Sequence record: MZ574432.2 | Direction: 5' to 3' (one strand) | DNA: 64,000 nucleotides | In this document: piece by piece, positions 5,604 through 63,332 of the stretch | How the letters are laid out: each line of letters starts with the position of its first letter | Position numbering within the stretch: position 1 is the stretch's first letter | Program-made: the position numbers and the translations under genes | The notes under the pieces: model-generated | What the model saw: only the letters and a program-made list of their open reading frames with translations | What the model was told of the DNA's origin: nothing | Databases searched by the model: none

Positions 5604-6296
5604 GTGACCATCACCATCGACCAGAAGGTCGACTTCCTCTGGAAGCGGTTGATCTACGGGGTCACCAAGACCGCGACGGCGGACGATAAGGCCGGCTCCA
5701 ACGAGTCGATCCCGTCGCCGATCATCGTCTCGGCCAACGACGTCTGGTCCGATGTCGACCTGATCACCGCCAGCCCGCCCGTGGCGGACACTGCGGTGAT
5801 CAAGCTGTGGACGGGCCTGACCCGTCTTCGGGCCTCCAGCGATCCGACGGCTCAGCCGAACTTCACCTGGATCGCGACCAGCACCTTTGGCGATCTGGCC
5901 TCCCGTAAGGGCGAGTTCATCCCGCCCGGCTTCGGCTCTGGCTACGCCGTCAAGGTCTACATCGGCGACCCGGCGACGGGACCCGCCGCCCGCATCTTCC
6001 CCGACACCACGGGCGAAGAGTGGGTCTTCGATTACGCCGCAGGCGTACTCAACTTCGCCGGCGCAGTGCCGGCCAATAAAACCGCCACGATCGGTAGTGG
6101 AACAGTCTCGGTGGCCAGTAATGGCATTTACTTCGAGGCCTACCAGTACATCGGAGAAAAGGGCGGTGGCGGAGGCGTGGAACCCGAAGACTTGGGCACC
6201 ATGGCTTACCAGGACTCCGACGACGTCAACATCACTGGTGGCACTATCGCAAATGCCACTTTCATCAACGTCACCATCGATGGTGGCACTTTCTAA
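5604..6296 (+). CDS. Virion/filament protein C, 230 aa (N module only)
   Basis: KVDFLWK.IYG.TKTA... and GPAARIFP.TT.EEWVFDY.AG shared with 3411-5591; GGGAGG SD. Confidence 0.8.
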   Translation: MTITIDQKVDFLWKRLIYGVTKTATADDKAGSNESIPSPIIVSANDVWSDVDLITASPPVADTAVIKLWTGLTRLRASSDPTAQPNFTWIATSTFGDLASRKGEFIPPGFGSGYAVKVYIGDPATGPAARIFPDTTGEEWVFDYAAGVLNFAGAVPANKTATIGSGTVSVASNGIYFEAYQYIGEKGGGGGVEPEDLGTMAYQDSDDVNITGGTIANATFINVTIDGGTF

Positions 6297-6310
6297 GAGG
6301 AATTGCCGTC

Positions 6311-6727
6311 ATGGCCTCTCTCGTCTACAACTCGATGCTGGACGATCTCGTCAAGGGCGCGATCAACTTCAACAGCGATACCTTCAAGGTTATGCTGGTG
6401 ACTTCGGCCTACACGCCGAACAAGGACACCCACACCCGCAAGAACCAAGTCACCAACGAAGTGACGGGCACCGGCTACACCGCCGGCGGTCAGGCCTCGG
6501 CCGTGACCATCACGCCCGACACCACCAACGACCGCGAAGACCTGTCGTTCGCCACGGTGACCTGGACCTCGGCCACGATCACCGCGCGCGCCGCCGTGAT
6601 CTACAAGGACACCGGCACGGCGTCGACGAGCCCGCTGGTCGCCTATGTCGACTTCGGCTCGGACGTCTCCTCGACGAACGCCAACTTCGCCGTGTCGTTC
6701 TCCAGCCCGCTGCGCTTCCAGAACTAA
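6311..6727 (+). CDS. Conserved small phage virion protein, 138 aa
   Basis: Recognisable phage family (DTFKVMLVTSAYTP..DTH......NEVTGTGYTAGG...A..AVIYKD.G....PLVAYVDFG); GAGGA SD. Confidence 0.8.
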   Translation: MASLVYNSMLDDLVKGAINFNSDTFKVMLVTSAYTPNKDTHTRKNQVTNEVTGTGYTAGGQASAVTITPDTTNDREDLSFATVTWTSATITARAAVIYKDTGTASTSPLVAYVDFGSDVSSTNANFAVSFSSPLRFQN

Positions 6728-12800: not shown

Positions 12801-15071
12801 TTCCACGTCCTGCCCGATCCGATCGTCGTCACCACCACCGCGCCCAACGCGACCGCGCGCGGTGATGTTCGCACGATCAGCGGGCTTGAGACCGTCACGG
12901 TCACGCCGCCAGAAGCCACGGTCTCTGTCCCGGCGGTCGTCGAAGCCTACACCGGCGACTTCATCATCCTGGCGATCCCGCCGTTCCCGCTGCTCGATCT
13001 GGCCGCCAACATCGCCGTCGCGATGCCGGCGCAGGTCGTCATCAACGGCAACGACGCCGAAGCCTCGACCGACATTACGGTCCCGCTCACGGCGGCCGAC
13101 ATTCTGGTCACCGCGCCGGAAGCCAATCCGACGGGCGTCCATGGCGGTGATCTGGCCACGATCGTCGTCACCCCGCCCCAAGGCGGCCCGCAGATCGACG
13201 CCAATGCGGCGGGCACGGTCGGCACGATCCAGATCGAGCCGGTTCGCTCCTACCGCATCCCATCGATCACCGTCATCCCGCCTGAAGGTCAGGCGCTGGA
13301 CGCGATCTCGGTCGACCTCAATCTGCCACTGCCGCCGGCCATCACCCTCAACACCATCGAGGGCGGTTTCCAGGTCGGCGTCAACGTCTCGCTGCCGCTG
13401 ACGACGATCTTCGTCTCGTCGATCTCGGCCATGGTCGTGATCGCCGCCGACGCCAAGGGCGCGATCGACACCATCGACGTGACGGGTCCCAGCGCCATCG
13501 TCCGCGTGCCGATCGCCATCAGCGGCACGGTCGGCACCATCCAAGTCCAGGCGCCCAACGTCTATGCGGGCGTTCCAGGCGATGCGACCGGCGCCCTGAC
13601 GGTCATCAACCTCGAACCGCCTTCGACGACCGTGACCGGCGCGGTCCTGGCCTCGCGTCCGATCGACACCATCGACGTCACCGCGCCCGTCGGCATCCCC
13701 CGCGTGCCGATCGCGACCTCGGGCGATCTGGCCACGATCATCGTCTCCACGCCGACGGGCCAAGCTGTCGTCGACGCGGTCAACGTCGCTGGCGATCTGA
13801 CCACCATCACCGTCACCTCGCCGACGGGTTCGGCGACGGGTCGCGCCCTGGGCACGGGCTCGATCGGCGTCATCACCGTGACGCCGCCGGTGGCCCATGT
13901 CGATGTTCCTGCTGCGGTCACCGGCACGGTGGGCACGATCATCGTCACCTCGCCCGAGCCCCTGGCCGGCGTCGCCGTTGATCTTTCCCTCGCCCTGGGC
14001 GTCATCACGCTCACCGCGCCCGAGGCTTCGACCCAGATCATCCCGCCGGTCCTGACGTCCGGCGACATCGGCACGATCATCGTCACGCCGGTGCCGGGCG
14101 CTTCGATCGTTCACGGCCAGAACTTCAGCCGCGCGATGCCGCCGGCGATCGCCGTCACCGCGCCCGTGGCCGACGTCAGCGCCGGCGTGGACCTGATCAC
14201 CGAGCCGGAACTGACGGTGATCATCGGCACGCCCCAGCCGCTGCTCTACCAGGAAGCCAATGTCATCGTCGGCTTCCCGACGATCTTCGTCTACGCACCC
14301 GACGCCACGGCCCTGGAAATCGCCGAATTCGTCTCGGTGATCGTCACGCCGCCGGACTGCTATGTGACCGTGCCGCTGGCCGAGGGCGAGGCGCGCGTGC
14401 GCTACCGCCGCAGCCAGATCAAGGGGACGGCGCCGGCTTCCTTGCAACCGCTTGAGATTGCGCTTAATGAGTATGATGGCGTTCTCTTCACGCGTGACGG
14501 CTCGGGTAACGTCAAGCCGACGCCGCTGGGTTCGCTAGTCGACACCGGCCTGCCGCCTGAAGGCGGTGACGAAGGTCAGGCTCTGAACGGAGCCTTGTCC
14601 TGGGCCGAGGTCGAGGCCACCTACACCGGTCCGATCCGCAACGCCCCGCCCGCCGGCGCCACCGTGCCGCTGAGCGATGGCGTGGTCGGGTCTGGCACCT
14701 TCACCCCGACCGTCGGCTTCACCTACACGCGTCCGTTCTTCGTGGCGCGGGAGATGGAGATCGATCACCTCGCCGTCGACGTGGTGACCAGCGTCGCCGC
14801 CACGGCGACCTGCGCCATCATCGAGTGGAGCCTGACGGGCACGCCCGGCGCGACCCTGGCGACGGGCGATGTCTCGACGGCCACGATCGGCGTGACGGCG
14901 GTGCCCGGCACGGCCATCACCCTGGCGCCGGGCTGGTACGCGGCCACCTTCGTCGTCAACGGCGCGGCGGGCGCAACCTTCCGTGCGGCGGTTTCGCCGG
15001 CCACGGTCGCGCCCGACATGACCACCACCCAGTCGACGCCGGCCTATGTCCTGGCGGCTTTGGAGACCTGA
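6802..15071 (+). CDS. Giant Gly-rich, LamG/ConA lectin-domain filament/fibre protein (~2,756 aa if joined), interrupted by a -1 frameshift at ~7942-7945
   Basis: Repeated modules (WGAGGGG...GGGGGST.VY.NG.L..VAGGGGG) run through frame 6802-7945 and continue in the 8127 frame, which is open back to TGA 7920-7922. LamG-like domain ~10200-10800; V/I/T/P-rich repeats ~11950-14380; terminal modules 14400-15071. Confidence 0.8.
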
Positions 15072-53207: not shown

Positions 53208-56200
53208 ATGACCGACTACACGCCCATGCTCCACCTGCCCCTGGTTGCCCCCAACCAGGACCAGAAGGAAGCCACGATCAACACCGCCCTCGCCATCCTT
53301 GAGGCGGCGAACAACGACACGCTCCAGGTGTCGCTGTCTGCGGGCGACGTGACGCTGAACACCGATCAGTTCACCAAGTATTTCCACCACCAGTTCTACG
53401 GCCACACCACGGCGCGCAGCGTCACCCTGCCCGACACCAATCGCTGGTTCGCGGTGGAAAACCAGGGCACGGCCACCATCACCTTCGTGATCAGCGGGTC
53501 CTCGGGCCTCTCGGCGGAGCTTGCCTCGGGCAAGATCGGTCTGGTCGTGTCCGACGGCACGGACCTGCGTTTTGTCGTCCCCGATCCGACCAGCGGGCTT
53601 GGCCTGCTGTCTGACCTCTCCGATGTCGACGGCGGCCAGACCGACGGCCAGCTTCTGCGCTGGTCCAATGCCGAGAGCGCCTGGAAGCCGTGGACGCTCG
53701 ACTTCTCGTTCCTGAACCTCAACGACACGCCCACCACCTACGTGTCCAACATCGGCAAGCTGGTGGCGGTCAAGTCCGACGGCACCGGCCTGGAGTTCGT
53801 CTCCTCGGCCGCCAACGTCAATTCGTTCGTCGACCTGGACGACACGCCCGACGGCTATGCGGGCTATGCCAACCGCACCGTCAAGGTCAACGGCGCCGCC
53901 AATAGCCTGATCTTCGATTGGCCTAAGCTGACGGAAGCCTCCGACTTCCCGTCGTCCTACGCCGGCGCGGCCAACAAGTTCCTGCGCGTCAACGCCGGTA
54001 CGAACGCCGTGGAATTCCATGCGCCGGTCGTGGCCGACCTTTCCGACGGGCCGGGCGCGCCCACGGGCAACGCCCTGAAGTACCTGCGCGTCAAGGCTGA
54101 CGGGACCGGCGTCGAATACGCCACGGGCACCGGCGGCCCGGACGACTTCCTCGAATTGCTCGACACCCCCGACAGCTACGCGGGCAAGGGTCTCTACTTC
54201 GTGCGGGTCAAGTCCGACCTCTCGGGCCTGGACTTCCTGCGCGCCAGCTTCACCGACCTGATCGACGTGCCCAGCACCTATTCGGGGCAGGGCGGCAAGT
54301 ACGTCAAGGTCAATGGTGGCGGGACGGGCTTGACCTTTTCGGCGCCGACAGTGCAGGAACTGTCCAACGGGCCGGGCAATCCGGCAGGTCAGGCCAACAA
54401 GGTTGTGCGCGTCAAGTCCGACGGCACCGCCCTTGAGTACGCGACCTTGCCGATCACCACGCTCTCGGGCTTCCCGTCGAGCTTCGCGGGCCAGGGCGGC
54501 AAGTACCTCCAGGTCAAGGGCGACGAGACTGGCGTCCAGTTCGTCACCTCCTCCTATACGACCAACTTCCTGGCCCTGACCGACACGCCGAGCAGCTACG
54601 TCGGGCAAGCTAACAAGCTGATCGCCGTCGACCCGACGGGCACGGGCCTGATCTTCGTCTCGCCGTCCAGCGGCGGGGCGACGAAGCTCGATGATCTCAA
54701 CGACGTGGAGTTCCCGACCGGCACGCCGGCCGATGGCATGGTGCTGACCTTCCGGGGCGGTATGTGGTCGCCGGAGGTCTCGGCTGGAGGTTCCGATGGA
54801 ACCCTGGCCGGCTTGACCGACGTGGCCCTGACCACGCCTGAGGAGGGTCAGGCGCTCGTCTATCGAAGCGGCGCCTGGACCAACGAGGACCAAAGCTCCA
54901 CCGCGATCGGCGTGCCCTCGTACGGCGCGCATGCTTATTGGCGCCTGCTGCTGCACACGACGGATGGATCGACCATCCAGTACGGCATCCAGGAAATCCA
55001 GTTCAAGGCGACGCGCGACGGCCCTGATCTGGCCAACGGCGGCACCGCCTCGGCCAGCACCGACGAATTCGGCACCGTCACGGGCGCGTTCGACAACATC
55101 ATCAGTGGCGCATGGTTCTCGACCACCGCCGCCGATGGTGAGTGGATCAAGTACCATTTCACCGCGCCGGCCGGCGTGCGCTATGTCACGATCCAAGGCT
55201 CGCAGTCCCAGCCGTCGACGTCGCCGGCCTCGTTCTCGGTTCAGTACAGCGACGACGACGCCGAATGGACCACGGCCTGGGAAGTCATCGGTCAGACCGG
55301 CTGGGCGCCGGGCCAGACGCGCATGTTCCATGGTCCGATGGACCTCTTCTTCACCGATCTGGCCGACGCGCCCCAGTCCTATGTCGGGCAAGCGGGCAAG
55401 TCGCTGCGGGTCAACACCGGCGGCACCGCCCTGGAGTTCTTCACCCTGCCCTTCGTGCCGGTGTCGATCGGCGATCTGGCTGACGTGGAGATGGGCACGG
55501 GCACGCCGGCCAACGGCTCGGTCCTGACCTGGAAGGACGGCGTCTGGCAGGCGGAGCCAAACACCGGTGGTGGAGGCGGCGGCGGCGCGAGTTCCTTCCT
55601 GGGCCTCAACGACACACCCGACAGCTACGTCGGCGAGGGTGGTAATGCCATCCGTGTCAAGATGACCGAAGATGGTTTGGAATTCTACACCGCCGGGACC
55701 GGAGGGGGTGGAGGCGGTAGCTGGCGCGGCGGCTGGGCGGCGGGCGCCGAGCAGGTCTTCATCGATTTCGAATCGGGTAGCCTCAATCCGGCGTTCACCT
55801 ACGATGCGTCGGGCTTTGCCGTCGTTGTCCAGCCCGATACCTTGGCGGGCACGACCAATGCACTGAAGTTCCGTCCGATTGGCAATGGCGCGACCTGCTA
55901 CTGCGAACTGCCGATCACGGACGTTCTCAGCGTCTCAAGCCTGAAGGTGCGCTACAAGGTCTCTTCCGAAGGCCCAGACTTTTTCCGCGTCTTGCAGGAC
56001 GGGTCGCAGGTTCACCAGGACAGCGGCAACACCGGTCTTTACGAAGAATTCTCGCTGGCCACGACGGGTGACCACACCCTGCGATTCTCCTATACCAAGG
56101 ACGGATCGCTCGCGGTTGGCGACGACACCGTCTATATCTCGCAGATCACCTACTACAAGACCCTGGATAATCCGTACGTCTATGGCGATACGGTCACCTA

Positions 56201-58058
56201 CCAGGGCGCCTATTGGCTGTGCCGCCAAGCAGGTACGTCCGAAGCCCCCGGCGCTGGCGATGACTGGATCAAGCTGCCCGAGACCTTGGCGTTGCTCAAG
56301 GACATCGACTTTTCGACTCCTCCGTCGGACGGTCAGGCGCTCGTCTATGATGGCGCCTCCAACAAGTTCAAGGCCGCAGACGTCGCGGGTGGCACAAGCG
56401 GCGGCAACAGATACAACATCGGCGTGACCCCGCGCACGCGCCTGCACCGCGCCGCTGTTCAGTCGATCCCGACCTCGACCTGGACGGCCGTCCAATGGGA
56501 TACCGAAACCGAGGACGCGGTCAACGCTTTCGTCTCCGGCGCCAACACCCGCGTCACCATCCCCGTGGGTGTAAAGGCCGCCCGCGTGACGGCCTACGCC
56601 AACTGGGTCACCTCGGTTGATGCTGCGAACGTCGGCATGGCCCTTCGCCGCAACGGCGTTGAGATCGGCTCGACTGGCGGTTCGCCGATCGCGGCCTCGC
56701 GCCCAGGTCAGTACCAGTCTCATCTGAACTTCACCTCGGAGTGGTTCACGGTCACCGCCGGTGACTACTACGAGATGTTCGTCTTCCAAAATTCCGGCTC
56801 AAGCCAGGACCTGAACGGTCCGGTCACCAACTTTGGCGAGAACACCTATCTCCAGTTCGAATGGGACGAAGGGGTGCCGGTCTCGTCGATCGAAGCTGGC
56901 GACTTCCACGCCCCGCACCAGGGCTGGAGAATGTTGGTTCTGGACAGCCAGACGGGCACCTACGCCACGATCACGGAGTTGAAGTTCTACGACCGCAGTG
57001 GCGTGCAGATCGCCACGACGGGTGGCAAGCTGTTCGACACCAATTCCCACCCCAGCTACCCGGTGCAGCAAGCGTTCGATGGCTCGACCACCTACTGGTC
57101 GTCGTCCCAGACGACCTCGACCGGTCAACTTGCCGGCCCTGGCTACATCTTCGCCGCGCCTGTCGATGTCGGTTCGGTCAAGGTCACCTCGCCCAGCACC
57201 GACTTCAACGCCACCAACTCGCCCAAGAACTTCGTCATCCAGTACAGCGACGACGCCGGCGCCACGTGGCTGACCTTCGCCATGTTCACCAACCAGACCG
57301 CCTGGGGTGATCGCGAAGAACGCACCTTTGTCCTGCCGACGAGTGGTGTCGCCCGCGTCGGGGGCGCCCGTACACTCGACGAACTCAACGACGTCGCGAT
57401 CGGCGTGCCCAAGCATGGGGACCTGCTGACCTACGATGGCGCGACCTCGACCTGGAAGCAGAAGACCCGCTGGGGCTATGCTCCGCCTAAGGCGGCAGAC
57501 TTCCCGACGGCCGTGGGCGCGGTCGCCCTGACCCTGTCGGATGACGATGAAGCTGGGTTGATGATCGACTGCGGCGCCAGCGCCACCTCGGACATTCAGC
57601 GCGGCGTTTTCAAAAGCCTGCCGACGGGTGACTGGTCCGTTACGGCCAAGATCATCGATCATCTGGCGCCGGTCTACTATAACGCCGTCGGGATCATGCT
57701 GCGCGAGTCGGCCACCGGCAAGCTCGTACTGCTGGGCTGCGAGGTCGCCGGATCGAGCTTCACAGTTCCGATGCGCCAAGTGCGTTACTCGCGACTGCCG
57801 GGCCTGTCCGGCTTCACGGCCAATGACTATGGCCGTCCCTCCCCGTCGATCCCGCAATGGTATCGGATTTCCTTGACGGGCAGCACCCTGAAGGCAGAAG
57901 TCTCGGCCGACGGGAAGTTCTGGCGCACCATCGTCACGCAGGCTGTGACGACCGGGTTCACGACCAAGCCTGACCAGATCGGTCTGGGCTGTTCGCTGAA
58001 CTATACCGATACCCAGAGCGCCATGCTCTCGGTTCCCTACTGGAACCAGTCCTTCTAA
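53208..58058 (+). CDS. Tail fibre / receptor-binding protein, 1616 aa
   Basis: DUF2793-like N-terminus, ~9 repeats of L.D.P.SY.GQ..K...VK.DGTG.EF, two discoidin/F5-8-like domains (..QYSDD...W.......QT.W..G..R.F), lectin-like C-terminus. Confidence 0.88.
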   Translation: MTDYTPMLHLPLVAPNQDQKEATINTALAILEAANNDTLQVSLSAGDVTLNTDQFTKYFHHQFYGHTTARSVTLPDTNRWFAVENQGTATITFVISGSSGLSAELASGKIGLVVSDGTDLRFVVPDPTSGLGLLSDLSDVDGGQTDGQLLRWSNAESAWKPWTLDFSFLNLNDTPTTYVSNIGKLVAVKSDGTGLEFVSSAANVNSFVDLDDTPDGYAGYANRTVKVNGAANSLIFDWPKLTEASDFPSSYAGAANKFLRVNAGTNAVEFHAPVVADLSDGPGAPTGNALKYLRVKADGTGVEYATGTGGPDDFLELLDTPDSYAGKGLYFVRVKSDLSGLDFLRASFTDLIDVPSTYSGQGGKYVKVNGGGTGLTFSAPTVQELSNGPGNPAGQANKVVRVKSDGTALEYATLPITTLSGFPSSFAGQGGKYLQVKGDETGVQFVTSSYTTNFLALTDTPSSYVGQANKLIAVDPTGTGLIFVSPSSGGATKLDDLNDVEFPTGTPADGMVLTFRGGMWSPEVSAGGSDGTLAGLTDVALTTPEEGQALVYRSGAWTNEDQSSTAIGVPSYGAHAYWRLLLHTTDGSTIQYGIQEIQFKATRDGPDLANGGTASASTDEFGTVTGAFDNIISGAWFSTTAADGEWIKYHFTAPAGVRYVTIQGSQSQPSTSPASFSVQYSDDDAEWTTAWEVIGQTGWAPGQTRMFHGPMDLFFTDLADAPQSYVGQAGKSLRVNTGGTALEFFTLPFVPVSIGDLADVEMGTGTPANGSVLTWKDGVWQAEPNTGGGGGGGASSFLGLNDTPDSYVGEGGNAIRVKMTEDGLEFYTAGTGGGGGGSWRGGWAAGAEQVFIDFESGSLNPAFTYDASGFAVVVQPDTLAGTTNALKFRPIGNGATCYCELPITDVLSVSSLKVRYKVSSEGPDFFRVLQDGSQVHQDSGNTGLYEEFSLATTGDHTLRFSYTKDGSLAVGDDTVYISQITYYKTLDNPYVYGDTVTYQGAYWLCRQAGTSEAPGAGDDWIKLPETLALLKDIDFSTPPSDGQALVYDGASNKFKAADVAGGTSGGNRYNIGVTPRTRLHRAAVQSIPTSTWTAVQWDTETEDAVNAFVSGANTRVTIPVGVKAARVTAYANWVTSVDAANVGMALRRNGVEIGSTGGSPIAASRPGQYQSHLNFTSEWFTVTAGDYYEMFVFQNSGSSQDLNGPVTNFGENTYLQFEWDEGVPVSSIEAGDFHAPHQGWRMLVLDSQTGTYATITELKFYDRSGVQIATTGGKLFDTNSHPSYPVQQAFDGSTTYWSSSQTTSTGQLAGPGYIFAAPVDVGSVKVTSPSTDFNATNSPKNFVIQYSDDAGATWLTFAMFTNQTAWGDREERTFVLPTSGVARVGGARTLDELNDVAIGVPKHGDLLTYDGATSTWKQKTRWGYAPPKAADFPTAVGAVALTLSDDDEAGLMIDCGASATSDIQRGVFKSLPTGDWSVTAKIIDHLAPVYYNAVGIMLRESATGKLVLLGCEVAGSSFTVPMRQVRYSRLPGLSGFTANDYGRPSPSIPQWYRISLTGSTLKAEVSADGKFWRTIVTQAVTTGFTTKPDQIGLGCSLNYTDTQSAMLSVPYWNQSF

Positions 58059-58073
58059 AACCCCGAGTAGCTT

Positions 58074-58718
58074 ATGCGTCATTACTGGAAGGTCCCCCGG
58101 CTTTGGGCCGGGGAGACCTGCGTCATCATTGGCGGCGGCCCCAGCGTCGCCGATGTCGATCTCTCCCAGATCAAGGGCCGCGCCCGTGTGATCACCCTCA
58201 ACAACGCTTGGGAACTGGTCCCTTTCAACGACATCCAGTTCTTCGCCGACACCCGCTGGTGGCGCTGGCATGGCGACAAATTCCCGGCTGATTATCCGGC
58301 TCGGATCGTCACGGTCTCCAAGGGCGACTTGCCCAACGGCGAGCGGGTCTTCCGGCTGCGCAAGGAGCATGAGGGCGGCATCTGCACCGATCCGCAGGCT
58401 GTGTTCGGCCGCGACAGCGGGCTGATGGCGATGAACCTTGCCTTCAATCTCGGGGTGGGGCGCATCGTCCTGATCGGCTATGACATGCGCTTCACGGGCG
58501 GCCAAGGGCACTGGCACGAGGATCACCCGATCCCCGGCAAGGAAAGCTACTATACCGACGACTTCGCGCCGCTCTATCCGCCGGCGGTCGCCAAGATGCA
58601 GCAAGTGGGCGTCGAGGTGCTGCGCGTGACGCCCTCGGCCCTTGACTTCATCCCCCAGGTCACGCTCGAAGACGCACTCTCGCGCCCACCGCGCCACCGA
58701 AGCGATCTCTATGCCTAG
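58074..58718 (+). CDS. MptE-like / glycosyltransferase-related protein, 214 aa
   Basis: CVIIGGGPS....DL......VI..N.A......D..FF.D..W and A.NLA...G...IVLIG.D. Confidence 0.7.
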   Translation: MRHYWKVPRLWAGETCVIIGGGPSVADVDLSQIKGRARVITLNNAWELVPFNDIQFFADTRWWRWHGDKFPADYPARIVTVSKGDLPNGERVFRLRKEHEGGICTDPQAVFGRDSGLMAMNLAFNLGVGRIVLIGYDMRFTGGQGHWHEDHPIPGKESYYTDDFAPLYPPAVAKMQQVGVEVLRVTPSALDFIPQVTLEDALSRPPRHRSDLYA

Positions 58719-59535
58719 AGCCTATGTCGATCTCAAGGACACGCCCCACTATCGGCTGACGAGTTTCATCAACGGCTTTGCGCGCCTGGGCTTCATGGTG
58801 CGACGCGGAGCGCCCGACCAGCCGCTGGGTCCCGACGACGCGGTCGTGGTCTGGAACCGGATGGGGCGCTCGCTGAAGGCCGAAACCATGGCCAGGGAAG
58901 GTGGAGCGGCGCTGATCGTCGCCGAGAACGGCTACCATGGCAAGGACGCCGACGGCATCCAAAGCTATGCCCTGGCGCTGGATGGCCACAATGGCTCGGG
59001 CCGTTGGTTCGTCGGCGACGACGAGCGCCTGAAGGCCTTGCGCATCGATTTCAAGCCCTGGCGCGTGCAGCAGACCGGCAAGTTCCTGATCGCCGCCCAG
59101 CGCGGGATTGGCTCACCCTTGATGCGTTCTCCGCCGCACTTCGCCGAACGGCTGGTCGAGCGGGTGGAAGCCCAGGGCATGCGCGCCTATATCCGCCCCC
59201 ATCCAGGTCAGCACACGCCGCCAACGACCCTGCTCCAGGACCTGGAGGACAAAGAGGGCCTGCTGGTCTGGTCCTCGAACGCGGCGACCCAGGCATTGAT
59301 CCACGGTGTGCCTGTTCATTACATGGCGCCGTCGATCGTGACGCGAGGCGCGGCCAAGCGCTTGACAACTCCTTTCTTGTGGAATAGCTCTGCGGATGCT
59401 CGCCCGGAGGCTTTCCAGCGGATGGCGTGGGCGCAGTGGTTCTTGAGCGAGATCGCTTCTGGCGAAGCGCTCAGAACCTTACTCGACGTCCACCAGGGCA
59501 AGCTGCCCTCCGTCCAAGAAGGATTTGGTATTTGA
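58711..59535 (+). CDS. Capsule-synthesis-like (KpsS-like) glycosyltransferase 1, 274 aa
   Basis: ATG 58711 overlaps the upstream gene; VAENGY, IRPHP, WSSNAA..ALI.GVP, L.AQW...EI.SG. Confidence 0.7.
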   Translation: MPRAYVDLKDTPHYRLTSFINGFARLGFMVRRGAPDQPLGPDDAVVVWNRMGRSLKAETMAREGGAALIVAENGYHGKDADGIQSYALALDGHNGSGRWFVGDDERLKALRIDFKPWRVQQTGKFLIAAQRGIGSPLMRSPPHFAERLVERVEAQGMRAYIRPHPGQHTPPTTLLQDLEDKEGLLVWSSNAATQALIHGVPVHYMAPSIVTRGAAKRLTTPFLWNSSADARPEAFQRMAWAQWFLSEIASGEALRTLLDVHQGKLPSVQEGFGI

Positions 59536-60392
59536 GCGATTTTGGGGTCTTCAAGCCTCCCTTCGTCGTGATCCAGCGCGGCAAGGAAAAGTCCGAGATG
59601 CTGGCCTCGGCCGTCGTCAAGGGCTATGGCATGGGCGTGGGCCAGATCGGCTACGGCACGCCCCTGGCGGACATCCCCGAGACGTTCATGCCGGTCTACG
59701 TCGGGGTCCACCCCCAGACGATCCAGTCGCTCCGCGACTGCCACGCCGCCCAGCGCCCCTTCGTCACGGTCGATAACGGCTATTTCAAGGGCTACAAGCG
59801 CGGCGGCTATTTCCGCCTGACGACCAACGCCATGCAGTGGGCGCACCGCCGCCATGGGGCCAACGCCCAGGACATGGCTCGCTTCAAGGCCCTGGACATG
59901 CCGGTCCAACCTCTGCGTCTGGGCCAGGGCGAACATATCCTGATCGCCTGCCAGTCGCCGACTTGGTATCAGATGATGGGCCTCGAAAGCGTCGAGGCCT
60001 GGGTCAATCCGCTGATTGATCGCCTGCGGCTGGTCACCGACCGACCGATCCGCGTGCGCCAAAAACCCCTCAAGGGCGTCAAAGAGCCGCCGATCGAGGA
60101 AGACCTGGAAAAATCCTGGGCCGTGGTGGCCTATTCGTCCAACACCTTGATCGAGGCGGCCCTAATGGGCATCCCGATCTTCCCTATGGCGTTCAGCGCT
60201 GCAACGCCTCTGGGCTCGACCGACCTCTCCACCATCGAGAGCGCGCCTTTCCGAAATCAGCGCACCATCAACCGTCCCGAGGTCTTTGCCCAATTGGCAG
60301 GCGCCCAATGGACGATCCCCGAAATCGAGTCGGGCAAGGCGTGGCTGGACCTAAGCCAGCGCTACGATCCCGACTTCAAGCCGCTGGCCTAA
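59532..60392 (+). CDS. Capsule-synthesis-like glycosyltransferase 2 (paralog), 286 aa
   Basis: TTG 59532 overlaps the upstream TGA; VDNGYF, VRQKP, YSSN..IEAAL.GIP, LA.AQW...EI.SG. Confidence 0.7.
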   Translation: MSDFGVFKPPFVVIQRGKEKSEMLASAVVKGYGMGVGQIGYGTPLADIPETFMPVYVGVHPQTIQSLRDCHAAQRPFVTVDNGYFKGYKRGGYFRLTTNAMQWAHRRHGANAQDMARFKALDMPVQPLRLGQGEHILIACQSPTWYQMMGLESVEAWVNPLIDRLRLVTDRPIRVRQKPLKGVKEPPIEEDLEKSWAVVAYSSNTLIEAALMGIPIFPMAFSAATPLGSTDLSTIESAPFRNQRTINRPEVFAQLAGAQWTIPEIESGKAWLDLSQRYDPDFKPLA

Positions 60393-60401
60393 GGACCCAC
60401 C

Positions 60402-61208
60402 ATGCCCCATCACGTCTTCGTCGGCTATGACAGCCGCGAGCAGGCCGCCTACGACGTCTGTGTCGACAGCCTCGTCGAGCATAACAAAGGTGACGACAAC
60501 GACATCGTCGTCCACAAGCTGGAGCACCGCGACCTGCGGCGGCGTGGCCTCTTCACCCGGCCCTGGCGGATCGACGAGACGGGTCAGTTCTGGGACGAGC
60601 GCGACGGACGACCGTTCTCGACCGAGTTCAGCCACAGTCGCTTCCTGGTGCCGACCCTGGCCTCGCAGATGGGCATCGTCTCGCCGGTCATGTTCGTCGA
60701 CTGCGACTTTCTGTTCGTCGAGCCGGTGCAGAACCTCTTCCACGAGGTCCTGGCGACCAAGCCCTTCGAGGACGGCAGCAATCCGCTCTGGGTGGTCAAG
60801 CACGAATTCAGCAAGGCCGAGGAAGGCGTCAAGATGGACGGCATGGTCCAGCAGGCCTACTTCCGCAAGCTGTGGTCGAGCCTGATGATCTACGACCTGC
60901 GCTTCCCGCTGCGATGGTTCCCGACCGCCGGCGAGGCCAACCACCATTCCGGCTCGCATCTGCACGGCTTCTACATCGCCCCCAACCTGCCGATGGAGGA
61001 TGATGTCATCGGAGCCCTTGATCCGGCCTGGAACTGGATTCCGGGCCATTCCTCGGACGACATCAAGCCCAAGGCCGTCCACTGGTCCCTAGGCGGGCCG
61101 TGGATGGACGGCTATGAAGACACCCCCTACGCCGTGACGTGGCGGCAGTACCGCAAGGCCACCCTGCTGGAGCAGGCTGGCATCCTCAAGAAGACCAAGG
61201 CAGCCTGA
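60402..61208 (+). CDS. GT8-like glycosyltransferase, 268 aa
   Basis: VFVGYD.RE..AY.VC..S, STEFS.SRFLVP, MFVDCDFL (DxD), RK.WSS, H.SLGGPW. Confidence 0.85.
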   Translation: MPHHVFVGYDSREQAAYDVCVDSLVEHNKGDDNDIVVHKLEHRDLRRRGLFTRPWRIDETGQFWDERDGRPFSTEFSHSRFLVPTLASQMGIVSPVMFVDCDFLFVEPVQNLFHEVLATKPFEDGSNPLWVVKHEFSKAEEGVKMDGMVQQAYFRKLWSSLMIYDLRFPLRWFPTAGEANHHSGSHLHGFYIAPNLPMEDDVIGALDPAWNWIPGHSSDDIKPKAVHWSLGGPWMDGYEDTPYAVTWRQYRKATLLEQAGILKKTKAA

Positions 61209-61735
61209 TGTCGTCGACCATCTCCGAAGCCTACCGCCGGCTGAACGCCCAGCTACACGCCGAAAACGACAGCTACGGCGTCCATGGCTGGATGTGGCTG
61301 GGACCGGTGCTTCACTTCGCCCAGGCCGCTGGCGCCCGCTCCCTCCTCGACTATGGCTGCGGCAAGGACACCCTGGCGCGCTGGATGCCCGTGACCGCGC
61401 CGGCCATCCGCGTCGAAAGCTACGACCCGGCCATCCCCGAGCATGCGGCCGATCCGCCGCCTTGCGACTTCGTCGCCTGCCTGGACGTGATGGAGCACAT
61501 CGAGCCTGACCATCTCGATGCGGTGCTGGCCCATATCCGCACCAAGATGCGCAAGGGCGGCTTCATGGTCATCTGCCTGCGCGAGGCCAAGAAGTCGCTT
61601 CCCGACGGGCGTAACGCGCACCTGATCGTGGAGTCCTCGGACTGGTGGCTGGACAAGCTCCGCACGGTCTTCAGCCGCGTCGACAAGCTCAAGGGCCTGT
61701 CGAAGGATTCGCTGGTCGTGGTGGTGACCCCCTAA
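61208..61735 (+). CDS. Class I SAM-dependent methyltransferase, 175 aa
   Basis: ATG overlaps the upstream TGA; LLDYGCGK, YDP, C.DV.EHIEP motifs. Confidence 0.88.
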   Translation: MSSTISEAYRRLNAQLHAENDSYGVHGWMWLGPVLHFAQAAGARSLLDYGCGKDTLARWMPVTAPAIRVESYDPAIPEHAADPPPCDFVACLDVMEHIEPDHLDAVLAHIRTKMRKGGFMVICLREAKKSLPDGRNAHLIVESSDWWLDKLRTVFSRVDKLKGLSKDSLVVVVTP

Positions 61736-62604
61736 TGGGTATTGGCGACAAGATGATGGCGATCGGTGATGCCTGGAGGCTGCACCGAGACGATCCGTTC
61801 AACCGGCGCGTGGCGATCGGCGATGGCCGGATCATCGACCAGACCGACAACGACCTGCTCTTTGGCCTCAACTTCATCGCCCGCGCTGGCCACATGGTCG
61901 AGCGCGAAGAGGTCCAGTGGGTGATCAGCTACCCCGGAAATCGCCCGTACATCGACTATCAGGCGATGCGCCGCGCTCTGGTCGCCCAGGGCCAGCGGGT
62001 CTTCAAGCAGAAGAAGCTGGCCTCGACGTTGGGCCGGTACATCTGGAAGATGGACTATCGTCCAACGCCGGCGCCGATCAAGCAGACGGCCGAGGAGGAG
62101 ATGATCACCGCCCGCTGGGCCAAGACCCCCTTCGTGGCGATCGAGCCCTATATCAAGGACGCAGCGCCCCGCGCCAAGCAGTGGCCCGTCGAGTACATGG
62201 CCGAGACGGTGCGGCGCCTCCGCGATCAGGGCGTCAAGGTCGTGCAGATCAGCGCCGGCGGCCAGGACATCATGCCCGGTGCCACCATGGCGGCCACGCG
62301 ATCCTATCGAGAGGCCCTGGCGGTCCTGAAGGCTGCCTCGCTCTACATCGGCCCCGAGGGCGGGCTGCACCATGGCGCGGCTGCCATGGGCACCAAGGCC
62401 GTGGTCATGTTCGGCGGCTACATCGATCCGCTGGTCACCGGCTACGACATGCACGTCAACCTCACGGGCGGGGTCGAGCAGTCCTGCGGCGTCCGCGAGG
62501 GCCACTGCCCGCACTGCAAGGAGGCGATGGCGAAGATCACGCCCGATCTGGTCATGGATCACGCCGTCCGGTTGCTGCGAGAGACCGTCACGAAAGTGCC
62601 TTGA
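61735..62604 (+). CDS. GT9 (heptosyltransferase-like) glycosyltransferase, 289 aa
   Basis: ATG 61735 overlaps TAA; MGIGD.MM, K.WP, LYIGPEGGLHH.AAAMG...VV.FG motifs. Confidence 0.85.
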   Translation: MGIGDKMMAIGDAWRLHRDDPFNRRVAIGDGRIIDQTDNDLLFGLNFIARAGHMVEREEVQWVISYPGNRPYIDYQAMRRALVAQGQRVFKQKKLASTLGRYIWKMDYRPTPAPIKQTAEEEMITARWAKTPFVAIEPYIKDAAPRAKQWPVEYMAETVRRLRDQGVKVVQISAGGQDIMPGATMAATRSYREALAVLKAASLYIGPEGGLHHGAAAMGTKAVVMFGGYIDPLVTGYDMHVNLTGGVEQSCGVREGHCPHCKEAMAKITPDLVMDHAVRLLRETVTKVP

Positions 62605-62627
62605 CGCGTTCAGAAACCTCTGCTACG

Positions 62628-62643
62628 TGTCGTGATTCTTGAC
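62628..62643 (+). promoter_or_regulatory. Motif promoter (copy 12) for the lysis cassette
   Basis: tgtcg-tgatt-cttgac. Confidence 0.7.
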
Positions 62644-62661
62644 TTGAGACGTTAACCGTGA

Positions 62662-62688
62662 CACGAAAGGGGCCTCTCCCCTTTCGTG
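62662..62688 (+). promoter_or_regulatory. 11-bp hairpin over the endolysin ribosome-binding region
   Basis: cacgaaagggg-cctct-cccctttcgtg, ending 8 nt before ATG 62697. Confidence 0.65.
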
Positions 62689-62696
62689 AGCACCCT

Positions 62697-63332
62697 ATGC
62701 GCGTCTCCCCCGCAGGCTTGGCGCTGATCCAAGCCTGGGAAGGCATCGAAGACGGCGATCCGTCGACGGTCCTTCTCGACCCCTATATCGACATCGTCGG
62801 CATCTACACCATCGGCTGGGGCCACGTGCTCCTGACGCCGGCCGGCGTCCAGATCAACGTCAACACCTTCGGCAAGGCCAAGGCCGCCAAGCTCGCCAAG
62901 GAAGCCATGGTCCGCATGTTCGGCGCCGAGGCGATCACCCGCGAGAAGGCCGAAGAACTGCTTCGCGCCGACATCTTCTCGTTCGAGAGCTACGTGTCGG
63001 GCATCGTCGCTGCCGACACGACCCAGGGCCAGTTCGACGCCCTGTGCGCCTTCGCCTTCAACGTCGGCAAGCAGGGCCTTGCCAAGTCGAGCTTGCTGCG
63101 TCTGCACAACGCCGGCAAGCGCGCGGTGGGCACGCTCGACGTGGCCAACCTGATCGCCACCTCCAAGGCCCAGAAGGCGCCGACCAACATCCCGCAGGGC
63201 TTCACCTCCTGGTCCTACGCGGCCAAGAAGTGGACGCGCGGCCTCTTCCGCCGCCGCTGTTCCGAAGCCCTGGTCTATGGCGGCATGCCCGGCGCCCAGG
63301 CGTTCAAGCAGGTGCAGAGCTATGCCGCCTAA
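62697..63332 (+). CDS. Endolysin (GH24 lysozyme), 211 aa
   Basis: LI..WEG......Y.D.VG..TIGWGH, QGQFDALC.F.FN.G, GL.RRR..EA. Confidence 0.93.
   Translation: MRVSPAGLALIQAWEGIEDGDPSTVLLDPYIDIVGIYTIGWGHVLLTPAGVQINVNTFGKAKAAKLAKEAMVRMFGAEAITREKAEELLRADIFSFESYVSGIVAADTTQGQFDALCAFAFNVGKQGLAKSSLLRLHNAGKRAVGTLDVANLIATSKAQKAPTNIPQGFTSWSYAAKKWTRGLFRRRCSEALVYGGMPGAQAFKQVQSYAA

What the first reader, a model, noticed from the sequence alone, without database searches (positions are those of the whole stretch)
58074..62604. Six-gene, translationally coupled glycosylation cluster between tail fibre and lysis genes
Seen: MptE-like, two capsule-synthesis-like GTs, GT8-like, SAM methyltransferase and GT9-like genes, mostly with overlapping stop/start codons, continuing the tail-fibre operon with no terminator. 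Established: some mycobacteriophages glycosylate virion proteins with GTs encoded beside structural genes; other phages modify host LPS or capsule. Inference: late co-expression favours building a methylated glycan on the Ser/Thr-rich fibres or filament; host-surface remodelling is the alternative.
Basis: partly seen in the sequence, partly recalled or inferred. Interest (0 to 1): 0.65.

Follow-up and report, generated by a model that had tools for sequence, protein, structure and literature searches.

The report
Phage virion-module glycosylation gene cassette
Six tightly packed genes at the end of the tail operon of the giant Caulobacter phage BL47 encode sugar-adding and methylating enzymes, and versions of the same cassette sit among head genes of about 70 uncultured phages, so it most likely puts a sugar coat on virus particle proteins, though no experiment has shown this.

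Summary
The window is Caulobacter phage BL47 (window + 62000 = MZ574432.2). The six genes are gp178-gp183, all 'hypothetical' in GenBank. They are co-directional; four of five junctions overlap and no terminator separates them from tail gene gp177. dN/dS is 0.10-0.29.

Identities:
- g1: Cst-II/Maf-type (GT42-like) transferase fold.
- g2 and g3: paralogues with the KpsC/WbbB/KrkA beta-Kdo-transferase fold. g2 keeps the CMP-binding RxHP motif, the Gln and the Glu, but has an invariant Gly where the catalytic Asp should be. g3 also lacks the His.
- g4: GT8-like GT-A with DxD.
- g5: class I SAM methyltransferase.
- g6: GT9 (heptosyltransferase family).

New here: the cassette is not peculiar to Caulobacter jumbo phages. 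In 72 non-redundant IMG/VR loci the order g1-g2-g3-(methyltransferases)-g6-g4 recurs. It usually lies between the capsid gene and the connector and tail genes, often just after a collagen-like fibre gene. phiCbK itself lacks g2, g4 and g6. BL47 encodes no sugar-nucleotide synthesis genes and no TET-type enzyme.

Best reading (about 0.5): a late-expressed virion-protein glycosylation cassette using host CMP-ulosonate, ADP-heptose and UDP-hexose. Host-envelope remodelling remains a serious rival. I found no published description of it. The scan's earlier notes did not cover it.

The parts
53208..58058 (+). gp177, a 1616-aa distal tail or fibre protein directly upstream. It is context and one candidate acceptor.
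   Evidence: Annotated as a tail protein. Pfam finds two F5/8 type C domains plus a weak CBM_5_12 at residues 990-1013. The C-terminal motif of the collagen-like fibres that precede the cassette in other phages matches it weakly, with hmm E 4e-5.
58074..58718 (+). g1 = gp178, 214 aa. It has a Cst-II/Maf-type (GT42-like, MptE-like/DUF115) transferase fold and is a putative CMP-ulosonic-acid-dependent glycosyltransferase.
   Evidence: PHROG 4603 gives 1.3e-38. Pfam MptE-like scores 23.9 bits, below the 34.6 cut-off, while most homologues carry PF01973. The AF2 model has pLDDT 90. Foldseek top hits are Cst-II 1ro8 (E 1e-4), Maf 5mu5 and archaeal MptE HPPK. The invariant GGGPS loop, D59, R61, D137, H146 and H148 are conserved.
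58711..59535 (+). g2 = gp179, 274 aa. It has the KpsC/WbbB/KrkA beta-Kdo-transferase fold with the RxHP, Gln and Glu motifs but no nucleophile Asp.
   Evidence: There is no Pfam, PHROG, NCBIfam or PDB sequence hit. More than 390 homologues exist, mostly viral. The AF2 model has pLDDT 93. Foldseek gives KpsC E 4e-8. VIA-align gives Z 12.0 for KpsC, 11.7 for WbbB and 9.1 for KrkA, against 8.4 or less for other GT-B folds. Motif mapping against E. coli KpsC comes.
59532..60392 (+). g3 = gp180, 286 aa. It is a paralogue of g2 (DUF6716-like) that lacks both the His of the HP motif and the Asp.
   Evidence: BLASTP against g2 gives 33% identity over 160 aa, E 1e-16. 15 of 39 family members hit PF20471 DUF6716. 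The clade alignment shows DNGY, the conserved Q, and K/R-x-K-P in place of RxHP. The N-terminal extension from the TTG start is conserved in orthologues.
60402..61208 (+). g4 = gp181, 268 aa. It is a GT8-like GT-A glycosyltransferase with a DxD motif.
   Evidence: PHROG 28018 gives 4e-77. The family alignment has invariant D100, D102, H227 and P233. 12 of 38 members hit Glyco_transf_8, best E 5.5e-6. Atlas neighbours are named glycosyltransferase or PF01501. Phage relatives are annotated as GTs.
61208..61735 (+). g5 = gp182, 175 aa. It is a class I SAM-dependent methyltransferase.
   Evidence: Pfam Methyltransf_23 gives 8.6e-11 at 42.3 bits, above the cut-off of 27. PHROG 24759 gives 6e-30.
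61735..62604 (+). g6 = gp183, 289 aa. It is a GT9 (heptosyltransferase-family) glycosyltransferase.
   Evidence: Pfam Glyco_transf_9 gives 8.4e-8 at 32.3 bits, above the cut-off of 22. NCBIfam heptosyltransferase I and II give 7e-5 and Aah/TibC gives 0.008, all far below their cut-offs. The family alignment keeps MGxGD, NKxW, EGxxHH and CGxR..C..C. It is the only GT9 in the BL47 genome.
62605..62696 (+). A 92-nt conserved leader between the cassette and the endolysin gene. It has TTGAC boxes and an 11-bp hairpin that ends just before the endolysin ATG. It marks the end of the cassette.
   Evidence: The fold is -39 kcal/mol, z -4.1. The sequence is conserved in CcrBL9 and CcrSC. No T-run follows the hairpin, so it is not a classical intrinsic terminator.
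62697..63332 (+). Endolysin gp184, given as context: the start of the lysis genes.
   Evidence: Pfam Phage_lysozyme gives 4.8e-25. It is annotated as lysozyme.

Best explanation
gp178-gp183 form a late-expressed, translationally coupled enzyme cassette. It probably builds a short, O-methylated oligosaccharide on one or more virion proteins in the cytoplasm before or during assembly, using only the host's activated sugars.

What is shown:
- The six genes are real, conserved and under purifying selection.
- Their fold and family assignments are as listed in the parts.
- The same gene set, in the same order, is a mobile cassette that sits in head and neck morphogenesis modules of many unrelated tailed phages.
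- BL47 has no nucleotide-sugar synthesis genes of its own.

What is inferred:
1. g1 (Cst-II/Maf-type) and g2 (KpsC-fold with an intact RxHP CMP motif) use CMP-activated ulosonic acids, either Kdo or pseudaminic acid. Caulobacter makes both.
2. g1 may start the chain on Ser/Thr, as Maf proteins do on flagellin.
3. g2 has Gly in place of the nucleophile Asp, so it would act by direct (inverting) displacement rather than through the covalent Asp-Kdo intermediate of KpsC, WbbB and KrkA.
4. g3 has also lost the His, so it is either a partner without catalytic activity or uses another donor.
5. g6 adds heptose from ADP-heptose, g4 adds a hexose, and g5 methylates. The product would resemble an LPS inner core.

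The acceptor is not known. Candidates are the product of the gene just upstream (fibre gp177 in BL47, collagen-like fibres elsewhere) or capsid proteins.
For: - Gene structure and conservation.
- Folds and families.
- Motif mapping onto E. coli KpsC. The motif definitions come from PMC10148158 and PMC12887879.
- Cassette recurrence: among 80 IMG/VR loci found through g2, g1 is present in 69, g3 in 66, g4 in 50, g6 in 35 and g5 in 21, in a conserved order.
- Context of the 72 non-redundant loci: 49 have terminase, portal, protease, capsid or collagen-like genes upstream. 33 have connector, head-completion, tail-completion or tail-tube genes downstream. The gene directly upstream is a collagen-like fibre in 14, often overlapping g1's start.
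- Independent contigs with precomputed Pfam show the same picture. One carries NDP-heptose-type synthesis genes (SIS_2, PfkB, CTP_transf_like) in front of the cassette.
- Donor supply: BL47 lacks CTP_transf_3, NeuB and SIS_2. In the control searches the host Caulobacter vibrioides has CTP_transf_3, NeuB and GT9.
- Precedent: Corndog carries an O-methyltransferase plus GTs between portal and protease, which its authors suggested modify the capsid (PMC4351075).
Against: - There is no direct evidence that any BL47 protein is glycosylated.
- No S/T-rich acceptor tails were found in the window's structural proteins, nor at the C-termini of the two capsid genes checked beside the cassette.
- Every identifiable GT family here (GT9, GT8, Kdo-transferase fold) normally works on lipid-linked LPS or capsule intermediates, not on proteins.
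- Position inside a late operon is also where morons insert.
- In BL47 itself the cassette follows the tail genes, not the head genes.
- phiCbK-type relatives build the same kind of virion without g2, g4 and g6.
- The donor sugars, the order of action and the inverting mechanism rest on analogy. They also rest on an hhalign alignment with weak statistics.
Confidence: 0.5

Rival explanations
1. Host envelope remodelling. The enzymes act at the inner face of the cytoplasmic membrane on lipid A-core, or on a KpsS/KpsC-type glycolipid or another lipid-linked glycan. This would alter the surface of the infected cell, or of a lysogen in temperate carriers. Possible effects are blocking superinfection, stopping progeny from sticking to debris, or draining host CMP-Kdo and ADP-heptose pools.
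For: - GT9, GT8-like and KpsC-fold enzymes are the classical LPS-core and capsule-linker families (PMC10148158).
- No protein acceptor signature was found.
- Burke et al. discuss sequestration of Kdo and heptose donors as a possible form of exclusion.
Against: - None of the six proteins has a clear membrane segment. The maximum 19-residue hydropathy is 1.66 or less.
- There are no Gtr-type flippase or membrane GT genes. The cluster also has no export genes.
- The cassette is translationally coupled to virion genes. In most of the 72 loci it lies between capsid and connector genes.
- BL47 is a lytic jumbo phage, and late expression leaves little time for new LPS to reach the surface.
- g1 belongs to the Maf/Cst-II fold. 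The Maf members of that fold glycosylate a protein.
Confidence: 0.22
2. Glycosylation of a non-virion protein. The target could be a host flagellin, pilin or S-layer protein, or a phage assembly factor. Alternatively the cassette makes a soluble or secreted oligosaccharide.
For: - g1 resembles Maf flagellin glycosyltransferases.
- BL47-type phages adsorb through the flagellum and pilus portals (PMC3556154).
- Caulobacter flagellins are pseudaminylated (PMC7591256, listed).
Against: - The cassette occurs in many HK97-like siphophages of unknown adsorption mode, at a fixed place in the head module.
- g1-only phages such as D3 and P1 also carry the gene beside head and connector genes.
- No benefit of late modification of host appendages is evident.
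Confidence: 0.1
3. DNA hypermodification. The GTs would decorate hydroxymethylated bases of phage DNA with Kdo, heptose or hexose glycans.
For: - Phage GT clusters do install Kdo, heptose and oligosaccharides on 5hmC, and some of those GT-A enzymes resemble GT8 (bioRxiv 10.1101/2023.12.21.572611).
- BL47 has a C5 cytosine methyltransferase 5.7 kb downstream.
Against: - No Tet_JBP (5mYOX) gene is present anywhere in BL47.
- The 'thymidylate synthase' is ThyX-like, not a ThyA-type hydroxymethylase.
- The published DNA GTs for Kdo and heptose are T4 beta-GT-like GT-B enzymes that sit next to C5-MT and 5mYOX genes. This cassette sits among capsid and connector genes in its other carriers.
Confidence: 0.04

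Closest known systems
Mycobacteriophage virion glycosylation (Corndog gp35-38; also Che8 and Myrna, cited from my own knowledge of Freeman et al. 2023, which I did not read here)
   Same: Both have a methyltransferase plus several glycosyltransferases encoded inside the virion structural module and expressed late. In neither case were the enzymes themselves found in virions. For Corndog the authors proposed, and others later reported, that they add methylated glycans to capsid and tail proteins (PMC4351075).
   Different: The enzyme families are entirely different. Here they are GT42/Maf-like, KpsC-fold, GT9 and GT8-like, and in Corndog they are GT2/GT4-type. The hosts are Gram-negative. The predicted sugars are LPS-core type (ulosonic acid, heptose). 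No S/T-rich acceptor tails were seen. There are no experimental data.
Retaining beta-Kdo glycosyltransferases KpsC (GT107), WbbB (GT99) and KrkA (GT140)
   Same: g2 has the same modified GT-B fold (Z 12.0, 11.7 and 9.1). It keeps the (K/R)xHP CMP-binding motif, the carboxylate-binding Gln and a Glu at the KpsC general-base position. Two paralogous modules stand side by side, as in KpsC-N and KpsC-C.
   Different: The invariant QXXXD aspartate nucleophile is an invariant Gly in the g2 clade and is also absent in g3. g3 additionally lacks the His. There is no Pfam Capsule_synth match, no membrane anchor and no kps export genes. The proteins are phage-encoded and lie in virion modules.
Cst-II (GT42) sialyltransferases and Maf flagellin nonulosonic-acid transferases (MptE-like/DUF115)
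   Same: g1 shares the fold and an N-terminal GGGPS nucleotide loop. The resemblance of that loop to the one in Cst-II is from my own knowledge.
   Different: g1 is a minimal 214-aa protein without the flanking domains of Maf. Its donor and acceptor are untested. The family also includes a non-GT member, the archaeal pterin kinase MptE.
LPS inner and outer core assembly (WaaC/WaaF GT9 and WaaO/WaaJ GT8)
   Same: The GT families are the same, and so are the likely donors (ADP-heptose, UDP-hexose). Heptose added onto Kdo is the canonical GT9 reaction.
   Different: There is no lipid A context, and the scores fall far below the NCBIfam equivalog cut-offs. The genes are phage-encoded and coupled to virion genes.
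Phage DNA sugar-hypermodification gene clusters (Burke et al., bioRxiv 2023.12.21.572611)
   Same: Both are multi-GT phage clusters that draw on host Kdo, heptose and hexose donors.
   Different: Those clusters are anchored to C5-MT plus 5mYOX or ThyS genes and use JGT-like GT-A or T4 beta-GT-like GT-B enzymes. BL47 has no 5mYOX, and this cassette travels with capsid and connector genes.

Membership tests
Retaining beta-Kdo transferases (GT99/GT107/GT140; Pfam Capsule_synth) | Modified GT-B fold shared by KpsC, WbbB and KrkA | tested here: met
   For the g2 model, Foldseek gives E 4e-8 and probability 1.0. VIA-align gives Z 12.0 over 226 aa against KpsC-N, 11.7 against WbbB and 9.1 against KrkA. 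The next fold class scores 8.4 or less. g3 was tested only through its paralogy to g2.
Retaining beta-Kdo transferases (GT99/GT107/GT140; Pfam Capsule_synth) | (K/R)XHP CMP-binding motif | tested here: met
   In g2, R162 is nearly invariant and H164 and P165 are invariant across 46 sequences. They align with the HP of KpsC. The motif definition comes from PMC12887879. The motif is not met in g3, whose clade has K/R-x-K-P or variants.
Retaining beta-Kdo transferases (GT99/GT107/GT140; Pfam Capsule_synth) | Invariant QXXXD motif with the aspartate nucleophile | tested here: not met
   The Gln is conserved (Q130). The position aligned with KpsC Asp160 (N module) and with the Asp of the C module is G134, which is invariant in the g2 family. 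The g3 clade has other non-acidic residues there. One caveat applies: the hhalign statistics against a single sequence are weak, although the flanking motifs are in register.
Retaining beta-Kdo transferases (GT99/GT107/GT140; Pfam Capsule_synth) | Sequence-profile membership (PF05159) | tested here: not met
   g2 and g3 give no Pfam hit at E 0.1 or below. Only a distant atlas neighbour cluster carries PF05159, in 17% of its members. The g3 family instead hits PF20471 DUF6716 in 15 of 39 members.
GT42 / Maf (Pfam MptE-like PF01973) | Profile match and sialyltransferase-type GT-A variant fold | tested here: met
   The fold matches Cst-II, Maf, MptE HPPK and GT29 enzymes at probability 1.0 and E 1e-4 to 1e-3. 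PF01973 is precomputed for most homologues. BL47 g1 itself scores below the Pfam cut-off, 23.9 against 34.6 bits.
GT42 / Maf (Pfam MptE-like PF01973) | Transfer of a CMP-activated nonulosonic acid to a defined acceptor | not testable with these tools
   This needs an enzyme assay. The family also holds a kinase (MptE), so the fold alone does not prove GT activity.
GT9 heptosyltransferases | Pfam PF01075 above the gathering score, with conserved family motifs | tested here: met
   g6 scores 32.3 bits against a cut-off of 22. The family alignment keeps the N-terminal GD, NKxW and EGxxHH. That these correspond to GT9 catalytic and donor motifs is my own knowledge. The equivalog models for WaaC, WaaF, WaaQ and TibC are all far below their cut-offs, so no specific orthology can be claimed.
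GT8 | Pfam PF01501 match, and a DxD plus a downstream His for metal binding | tested here: inconclusive
   BL47 g4 has no Pfam hit. However, 12 of 38 family members hit PF01501, best E 5.5e-6. D100, D102 and H227 are invariant.
Class I SAM methyltransferase | Pfam Methyltransf_23 above the cut-off | tested here: met
   g5 scores 42.3 bits against a cut-off of 27.
Phage virion glycosylation systems (mycobacteriophage type) | GT and methyltransferase genes embedded in the virion structural operon | tested here: met
   In BL47 the cassette lies between tail gene gp177 and the endolysin gene, with no terminator. In 57 of 72 related loci it lies beside head, neck or tail marker genes.
Phage virion glycosylation systems (mycobacteriophage type) | Virion proteins carry glycans that depend on these genes | not testable with these tools
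   No proteomic or glycan data for BL47-type virions were found in the paper library.
Phage virion glycosylation systems (mycobacteriophage type) | Recognisable acceptor tails (S/T-rich extensions) on capsid or tail proteins | tested here: not met
   No 30-aa stretch in the window's structural proteins exceeds 0.47 S+T, and there are no low-complexity tails. The two capsid genes checked beside the cassette end with the Pfam capsid domain. BL47's own capsid gene lies outside the window and was not examined.
DNA sugar-hypermodification clusters | Adjacency to C5-MT plus 5mYOX (TET/JBP) or a ThyA-like hydroxymethylase | tested here: not met
   BL47 has no Tet_JBP match. gp201 is ThyX-like. The C5-MT is 5.7 kb away, beyond the lysis genes. 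No such genes appear beside the cassette in the other loci.

The most novel reading that the evidence does not exclude
A widespread and so far undescribed cassette of tailed phages of Gram-negative bacteria builds an LPS-inner-core-like, O-methylated oligosaccharide (ulosonic acid, heptose, hexose) on head or fibre proteins. Candidate acceptors include collagen-like head fibres and the BL47 fibre gp177. The cassette would use only host nucleotide sugars. Its g2/g3 enzymes would be a new branch of the beta-Kdo-transferase fold that has swapped the covalent Asp mechanism for direct displacement.
Probability: 0.3. Interest if true: 0.8.

Novelty: new variant of a known kind. Interest (0 to 1): 0.6.

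Why it matters
Protein glycosylation of phage particles has been shown experimentally only in a few actinobacteriophages, and in giant algal viruses. If this cassette does the same in phages of proteobacteria, virion glycans would be a common and portable trait rather than an oddity. That would bear on particle stability, on adsorption and self-recognition by the lectin-like fibres encoded next door, on immune recognition of therapeutic phages, and on why some structural proteins escape mass-spectrometric detection.

The g2/g3 family matters independently. It keeps the CMP-binding machinery of the beta-Kdo transferases but lacks their defining nucleophile. That makes it a natural test case for how the fold can change mechanism, and a possible source of new ulosonic-acid transferases.

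The work also assigns functions to six 'hypothetical' genes in BL47, and to their homologues in its Caulobacter phage relatives and in several hundred metagenomic sequences.

Tried and rejected
- **Sequence searches of g2, g3 and g4.** Searches against Pfam, PHROGs (g2 and g3), NCBIfam and PDB sequences gave nothing usable. The g1 PDB sequence hits were chance matches to T-cell receptor chains. Identification needed predicted structures and family-wide scans.
- **g2-g3 complex prediction.** The score was 0.01 against a mark of 0.32, which gives no verdict. It is not evidence for or against a heterodimer.
- **Search for Ser/Thr-rich acceptor regions.** None were found in the window's structural proteins.
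- **Link between the collagen-like fibre and BL47.** Only a short CBM5/12-like motif in gp177 matched (hmm E 4e-5, Pfam CBM_5_12 below its cut-off). It is too generic to count as homology of the whole proteins.
- **TibC-type metal finger in g6.** I considered that the Cys cluster might mark a TibC-type protein heptosyltransferase. The CGxR..C..C motif is conserved in the phage family. NCBIfam Aah/TibC scores worse than the LPS heptosyltransferases, so I draw no inference.
- **Whole-genome search of the window's own assembly.** It was not possible because no genome is held. The BL47 GenBank record was searched through a locus handle instead.
- **Hairpin after g6.** It is not a classical terminator, because it has no T-run.
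- **Not attempted.** Expression data from sequencing runs were not sought, and the residue-level geometry of the predicted active sites was not examined.

Full report
**What the window is.** The flagged stretch is 100% identical to Caulobacter phage BL47 (MZ574432.2). BL47 is a 326.8-kb phiCbK-like jumbo siphophage of the genus Bertelyvirus. Window coordinate + 62000 gives the record coordinate. The six ORFs correspond to gp178-gp183, all deposited as 'hypothetical protein'. Upstream lie the tape measure, distal tail proteins and the 1616-aa gp177. Downstream lie an endolysin and small lysis-type genes.

**The observation.** Reading the sequence gives these gene models:

| Gene | Coordinates | Junction with the next gene |
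|---|---|---|
| g1 | 58074-58718 | overlaps g2 by 8 nt |
| g2 | 58711-59535 | overlaps g3 by 4 nt |
| g3 | 59532-60392 (TTG) | 9-nt gap to g4 |
| g4 | 60402-61208 | overlaps g5 by 1 nt |
| g5 | 61208-61735 | overlaps g6 by 1 nt |
| g6 | 61735-62604 | 92-nt leader before the endolysin gene |

- gp177 stops 15 nt before g1.
- No terminator-like site lies between gp177 and g6 outside coding sequence, and the site count equals the shuffle expectation.
- The N-terminal extension implied by the TTG start of g3 is conserved in orthologues.
- All six genes are kept in CcrBL9 and CcrSC (about 78% nt) and in CcrColossus and CcrPW (about 65% nt).
- dN/dS against CcrBL9 is 0.10-0.29.

**What the proteins are.**

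g1:
- It matches PHROG 4603 ('alpha-2,3-sialyltransferase') at 1e-38, and Pfam MptE-like below the cut-off.
- Most of its homologues carry PF01973.
- Its AF2 model (pLDDT 90) matches Cst-II, the Maf flagellin glycosyltransferase, the archaeal MptE kinase and GT29 sialyltransferases.

g2 and g3:
- Neither has a sequence-family hit in Pfam, PHROGs, NCBIfam or the PDB.
- They are paralogues of each other.
- g2 has more than 390 homologues, mostly viral.
- Its model (pLDDT 93) matches the beta-Kdo transferases. Foldseek gives KpsC E 4e-8.
- VIA-align gives Z 12.0 (KpsC-N), 11.7 (WbbB) and 9.1 (KrkA). Other GT-B proteins score 8.4 or less.

g4, g5 and g6:
- g4 has no Pfam hit itself. Its family has invariant D100-x-D102 and H227, and 12 of 38 members hit Glyco_transf_8.
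- g5 is a Methyltransf_23 enzyme and g6 a GT9 enzyme. Both score above the Pfam cut-offs.
- The g6 family keeps MGxGD, NKxW and EGxxHH.

**A mechanistic twist in g2 and g3.** The literature defines the retaining Kdo transferases by three features (PMC10148158 and PMC12887879):
- an invariant QXXXD motif, in which the Asp is the nucleophile and the Gln binds the Kdo carboxylate;
- a (K/R)XHP CMP-binding motif shared with sialyltransferases;
- a Glu general base.

I fetched E. coli CFT073 KpsC and aligned the g2 family profile to each of its modules. The statistics are weak because the target is a single sequence. Even so, four motifs fall in register:

| g2 family | KpsC |
|---|---|
| AENGY | LEDGF (Glu66 base) |
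| Q130 | the Gln of QXXXD |
| R162-P-H164-P165 | the HP motif |
| WSS | the VTS stretch aligned with it |

- The residue opposite the nucleophile Asp is G134, which is invariant in 46 sequences.
- The g3 clade keeps the Gln and D/E-N-G-Y. It has K/R-x-K-P instead of RxHP and also has no Asp.
- 15 of 39 g3 relatives hit PF20471 DUF6716.

g2 and g3 therefore share the fold and the CMP-binding features of these enzymes but fail a defining feature. I do not file them as GT99 or GT107 members. The inference is that g2 uses a CMP-ulosonic acid by direct displacement. g3 is either an inactive partner or uses another donor. A g2-g3 complex prediction gave no verdict.

**The cassette is widespread and lives in virion modules.**
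- Contigs encoding distant g2 homologues show the same neighbours. These are an MptE-like gene, the g2/g3 pair, methyltransferases, GT9 and a g4-like gene, lying next to capsid, head-completion and tail genes.
- A profile scan of IMG/VR returned 80 loci.
- HMMs for the six proteins found g1 in 69, g3 in 66, g4 in 50, g6 in 35 and g5 in 21 of them. Many loci are cut by contig ends. The order g1-g2-g3-(MTs)-g6-(FkbM MT)-g4 is conserved.
- I clustered the neighbouring ORFs and annotated cluster representatives with Pfam. The typical layout is TerS, TerL, portal, S78 or ClpP protease and major capsid protein. Then come the cassette, a gp6-like connector, the head-completion protein, tail completion gp17 and the tail tube.
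- Of 72 non-redundant loci, 49 have head markers upstream, 33 have neck or tail markers downstream, and 57 have at least one.
- In 14 loci the gene directly upstream of g1 is a collagen-like fibre, with up to 67 G-X-Y triplets and a CBM5/12-like C-terminus. Its stop often overlaps g1's start.
- In BL47 the upstream gene is fibre gp177, which has two F5/8 type C domains and a weak CBM_5_12. The collagen-fibre C-terminal motif matches it only weakly.
- One contig places NDP-heptose-type synthesis genes (SIS_2, PfkB kinase, small nucleotidyltransferase, transaldolase) in front of the cassette. This fits a heptose-containing product.

**Distribution among relatives, and donor supply.**
- Protein searches of the isolated-phage collection find g2, g4 and g6 only in Bertelyvirus, CcrBL9 and CcrSC, and CcrColossus and CcrPW. 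A few unrelated phages also have g4 or g6.
- phiCbK, Karma, Magneto, Swift and Rogue do not have them. The cassette is therefore accessory within the subfamily.
- g1 alone is much more widespread. It occurs in Pseudomonas D3-like phages beside the head-tail connector, as P1 PmgO, and in Xanthomonas and Brevundimonas jumbo phages.
- The BL47 record has no CTP_transf_3 (CMP-Kdo or CMP-nonulosonate synthetase), NeuB or SIS_2 gene, and only this one GT9.
- The control genome Caulobacter vibrioides has CTP_transf_3, NeuB and GT9. The enzymes must therefore use host donors.

**How it most likely works.**

Shown: a conserved, co-transcribed-looking set of five glycosyltransferase-fold proteins and a methyltransferase. 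It travels as a unit inside phage morphogenesis operons and has no donor-synthesis genes in BL47.

Inferred: the enzymes assemble, in the cytoplasm and late in infection, a short methylated oligosaccharide of LPS-core-type sugars on a virion protein. g1 would start the chain, as Maf does on flagellin. g2, possibly with g3, would add ulosonic acid. g6 would add heptose, g4 a hexose, and g5 a methyl group.

The closest precedent is the O-methyltransferase plus GT block between portal and protease in mycobacteriophage Corndog. Its authors suspected that it modifies the capsid (PMC4351075). Later work reported virion glycosylation in such phages (my own knowledge, not read here).

I put this reading at about 0.5.

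**Rivals.**
1. Host-envelope remodelling (0.22). The enzyme families are the LPS-core and capsule-linker families, and no acceptor signature was found. Against it: there are no membrane segments and no Gtr-like or export genes. The cassette is also coupled to virion genes in lytic and uncultured phages alike.
2. Another protein target or a free glycan (0.1).
3. DNA hypermodification (0.04). Phage GT clusters can put Kdo and heptose on 5hmC. But BL47 has no TET/JBP gene and its thymidylate synthase is ThyX-like. The cassette's conserved partners are capsid genes, not C5-MT and 5mYOX genes.

- The preferred reading (virion glycan) gains real but indirect support.
- The named acceptors (Ser/Thr-rich fibres or filament) do not gain support. 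S+T content is ordinary and there are no S/T tails.
- The filament candidate gp142 (Laminin_G_3 plus a Gly-rich domain) has a homologue in phiCbK, which lacks g2, g4 and g6.
- Gill et al. noted that high-molecular-weight virion bands of phiCbK gave no peptides (PMC3556154). That phage has no cassette, so the observation cannot be credited to it.

**Novelty.** None of the papers I could search mentions this cluster. GenBank calls the BL47 genes hypothetical. The CcrColossus record names three of them generically.

Virion glycosylation as such is known. The following appear new:
- this enzyme set;
- its spread through head modules of uncultured phages;
- its link to collagen-like fibres;
- the Asp-less branch of the Kdo-transferase fold.

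I therefore class it as a new variant of a known kind.

The scan's earlier notes for this genome concern other loci and did not affect this reading.

Noticed in passing
window 62605-62696: The 92-nt spacer between g6 and the endolysin gene is conserved in CcrBL9 and CcrSC. It holds two TTGAC boxes and an 11-bp GC-rich hairpin ending about 10 nt before the endolysin ATG. The fold is -39 kcal/mol, z -4.1, and no T-run follows. It could be a separate late promoter and a translational or RNA-stability element for the lysis genes.
   Followed up: partly
L014-L089 (IMG/VR loci), e.g. L019:6947-8170, L065:7028-8182, L027:7204-8280: A family of collagen-like proteins has an N-terminal coiled coil, up to 67 G-X-Y triplets or PKPKDG-type repeats, and a CBM5/12-like C-terminal domain. 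The genes lie after portal or capsid genes and directly before the cassette in 14 loci. These proteins are candidate head fibres and candidate glycan acceptors.
   Followed up: partly
L003:1-9400 (JGI contig Ga0606624_0000290): A ten-gene sugar-nucleotide block lies immediately upstream of the cassette in a 63-kb phage contig. It includes a TPP enzyme, a DJ-1 protein, methyltransferases, a UDP-sugar dehydrogenase fragment, SIS_2, a transaldolase, epimerases, a small nucleotidyltransferase and a PfkB kinase. This suggests a phage-made modified heptose or higher sugar.
   Followed up: no
L005:5965-6993 and L005:10194-11144 (Sulfuricaulis MAG contig): Two radical SAM enzymes, one with a SPASM domain, are interleaved with the cassette between the capsid and head-completion genes. 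This hints at further modification of the sugar or of a peptide.
   Followed up: no
phage records hit (Pseudomonas D3 orf7 at 5864-6397; P1 pmgO at 79643-80032): Homologues of g1 alone, without g2-g6, sit next to head-tail connector genes in D3-like Pseudomonas phages. In coliphage P1 the homologue is PmgO ('putative morphogenetic function'). A Cst-II/Maf-fold protein may therefore be a common and unexplained component of head modules.
   Followed up: no
window 8127-15071 versus annotated 9111-15071: The reading frame of gp142 (Laminin_G_3 plus a Gly-rich domain, the homologue of the phiCbK head-filament candidate) stays open with possible starts back to 8127. That would add a Gly-run-rich 328 aa and overlap the end of gp141. 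The annotated start may be too far downstream, or the extension may be a GC-rich artefact.
   Followed up: no
L001:28415-30151 (BL47 gp190, beyond the window): A 578-aa protein lies between a putative DNA methylase and the C5 cytosine methyltransferase. It has no Pfam or NCBIfam match. Its function in that DNA-modification neighbourhood is open.
   Followed up: partly
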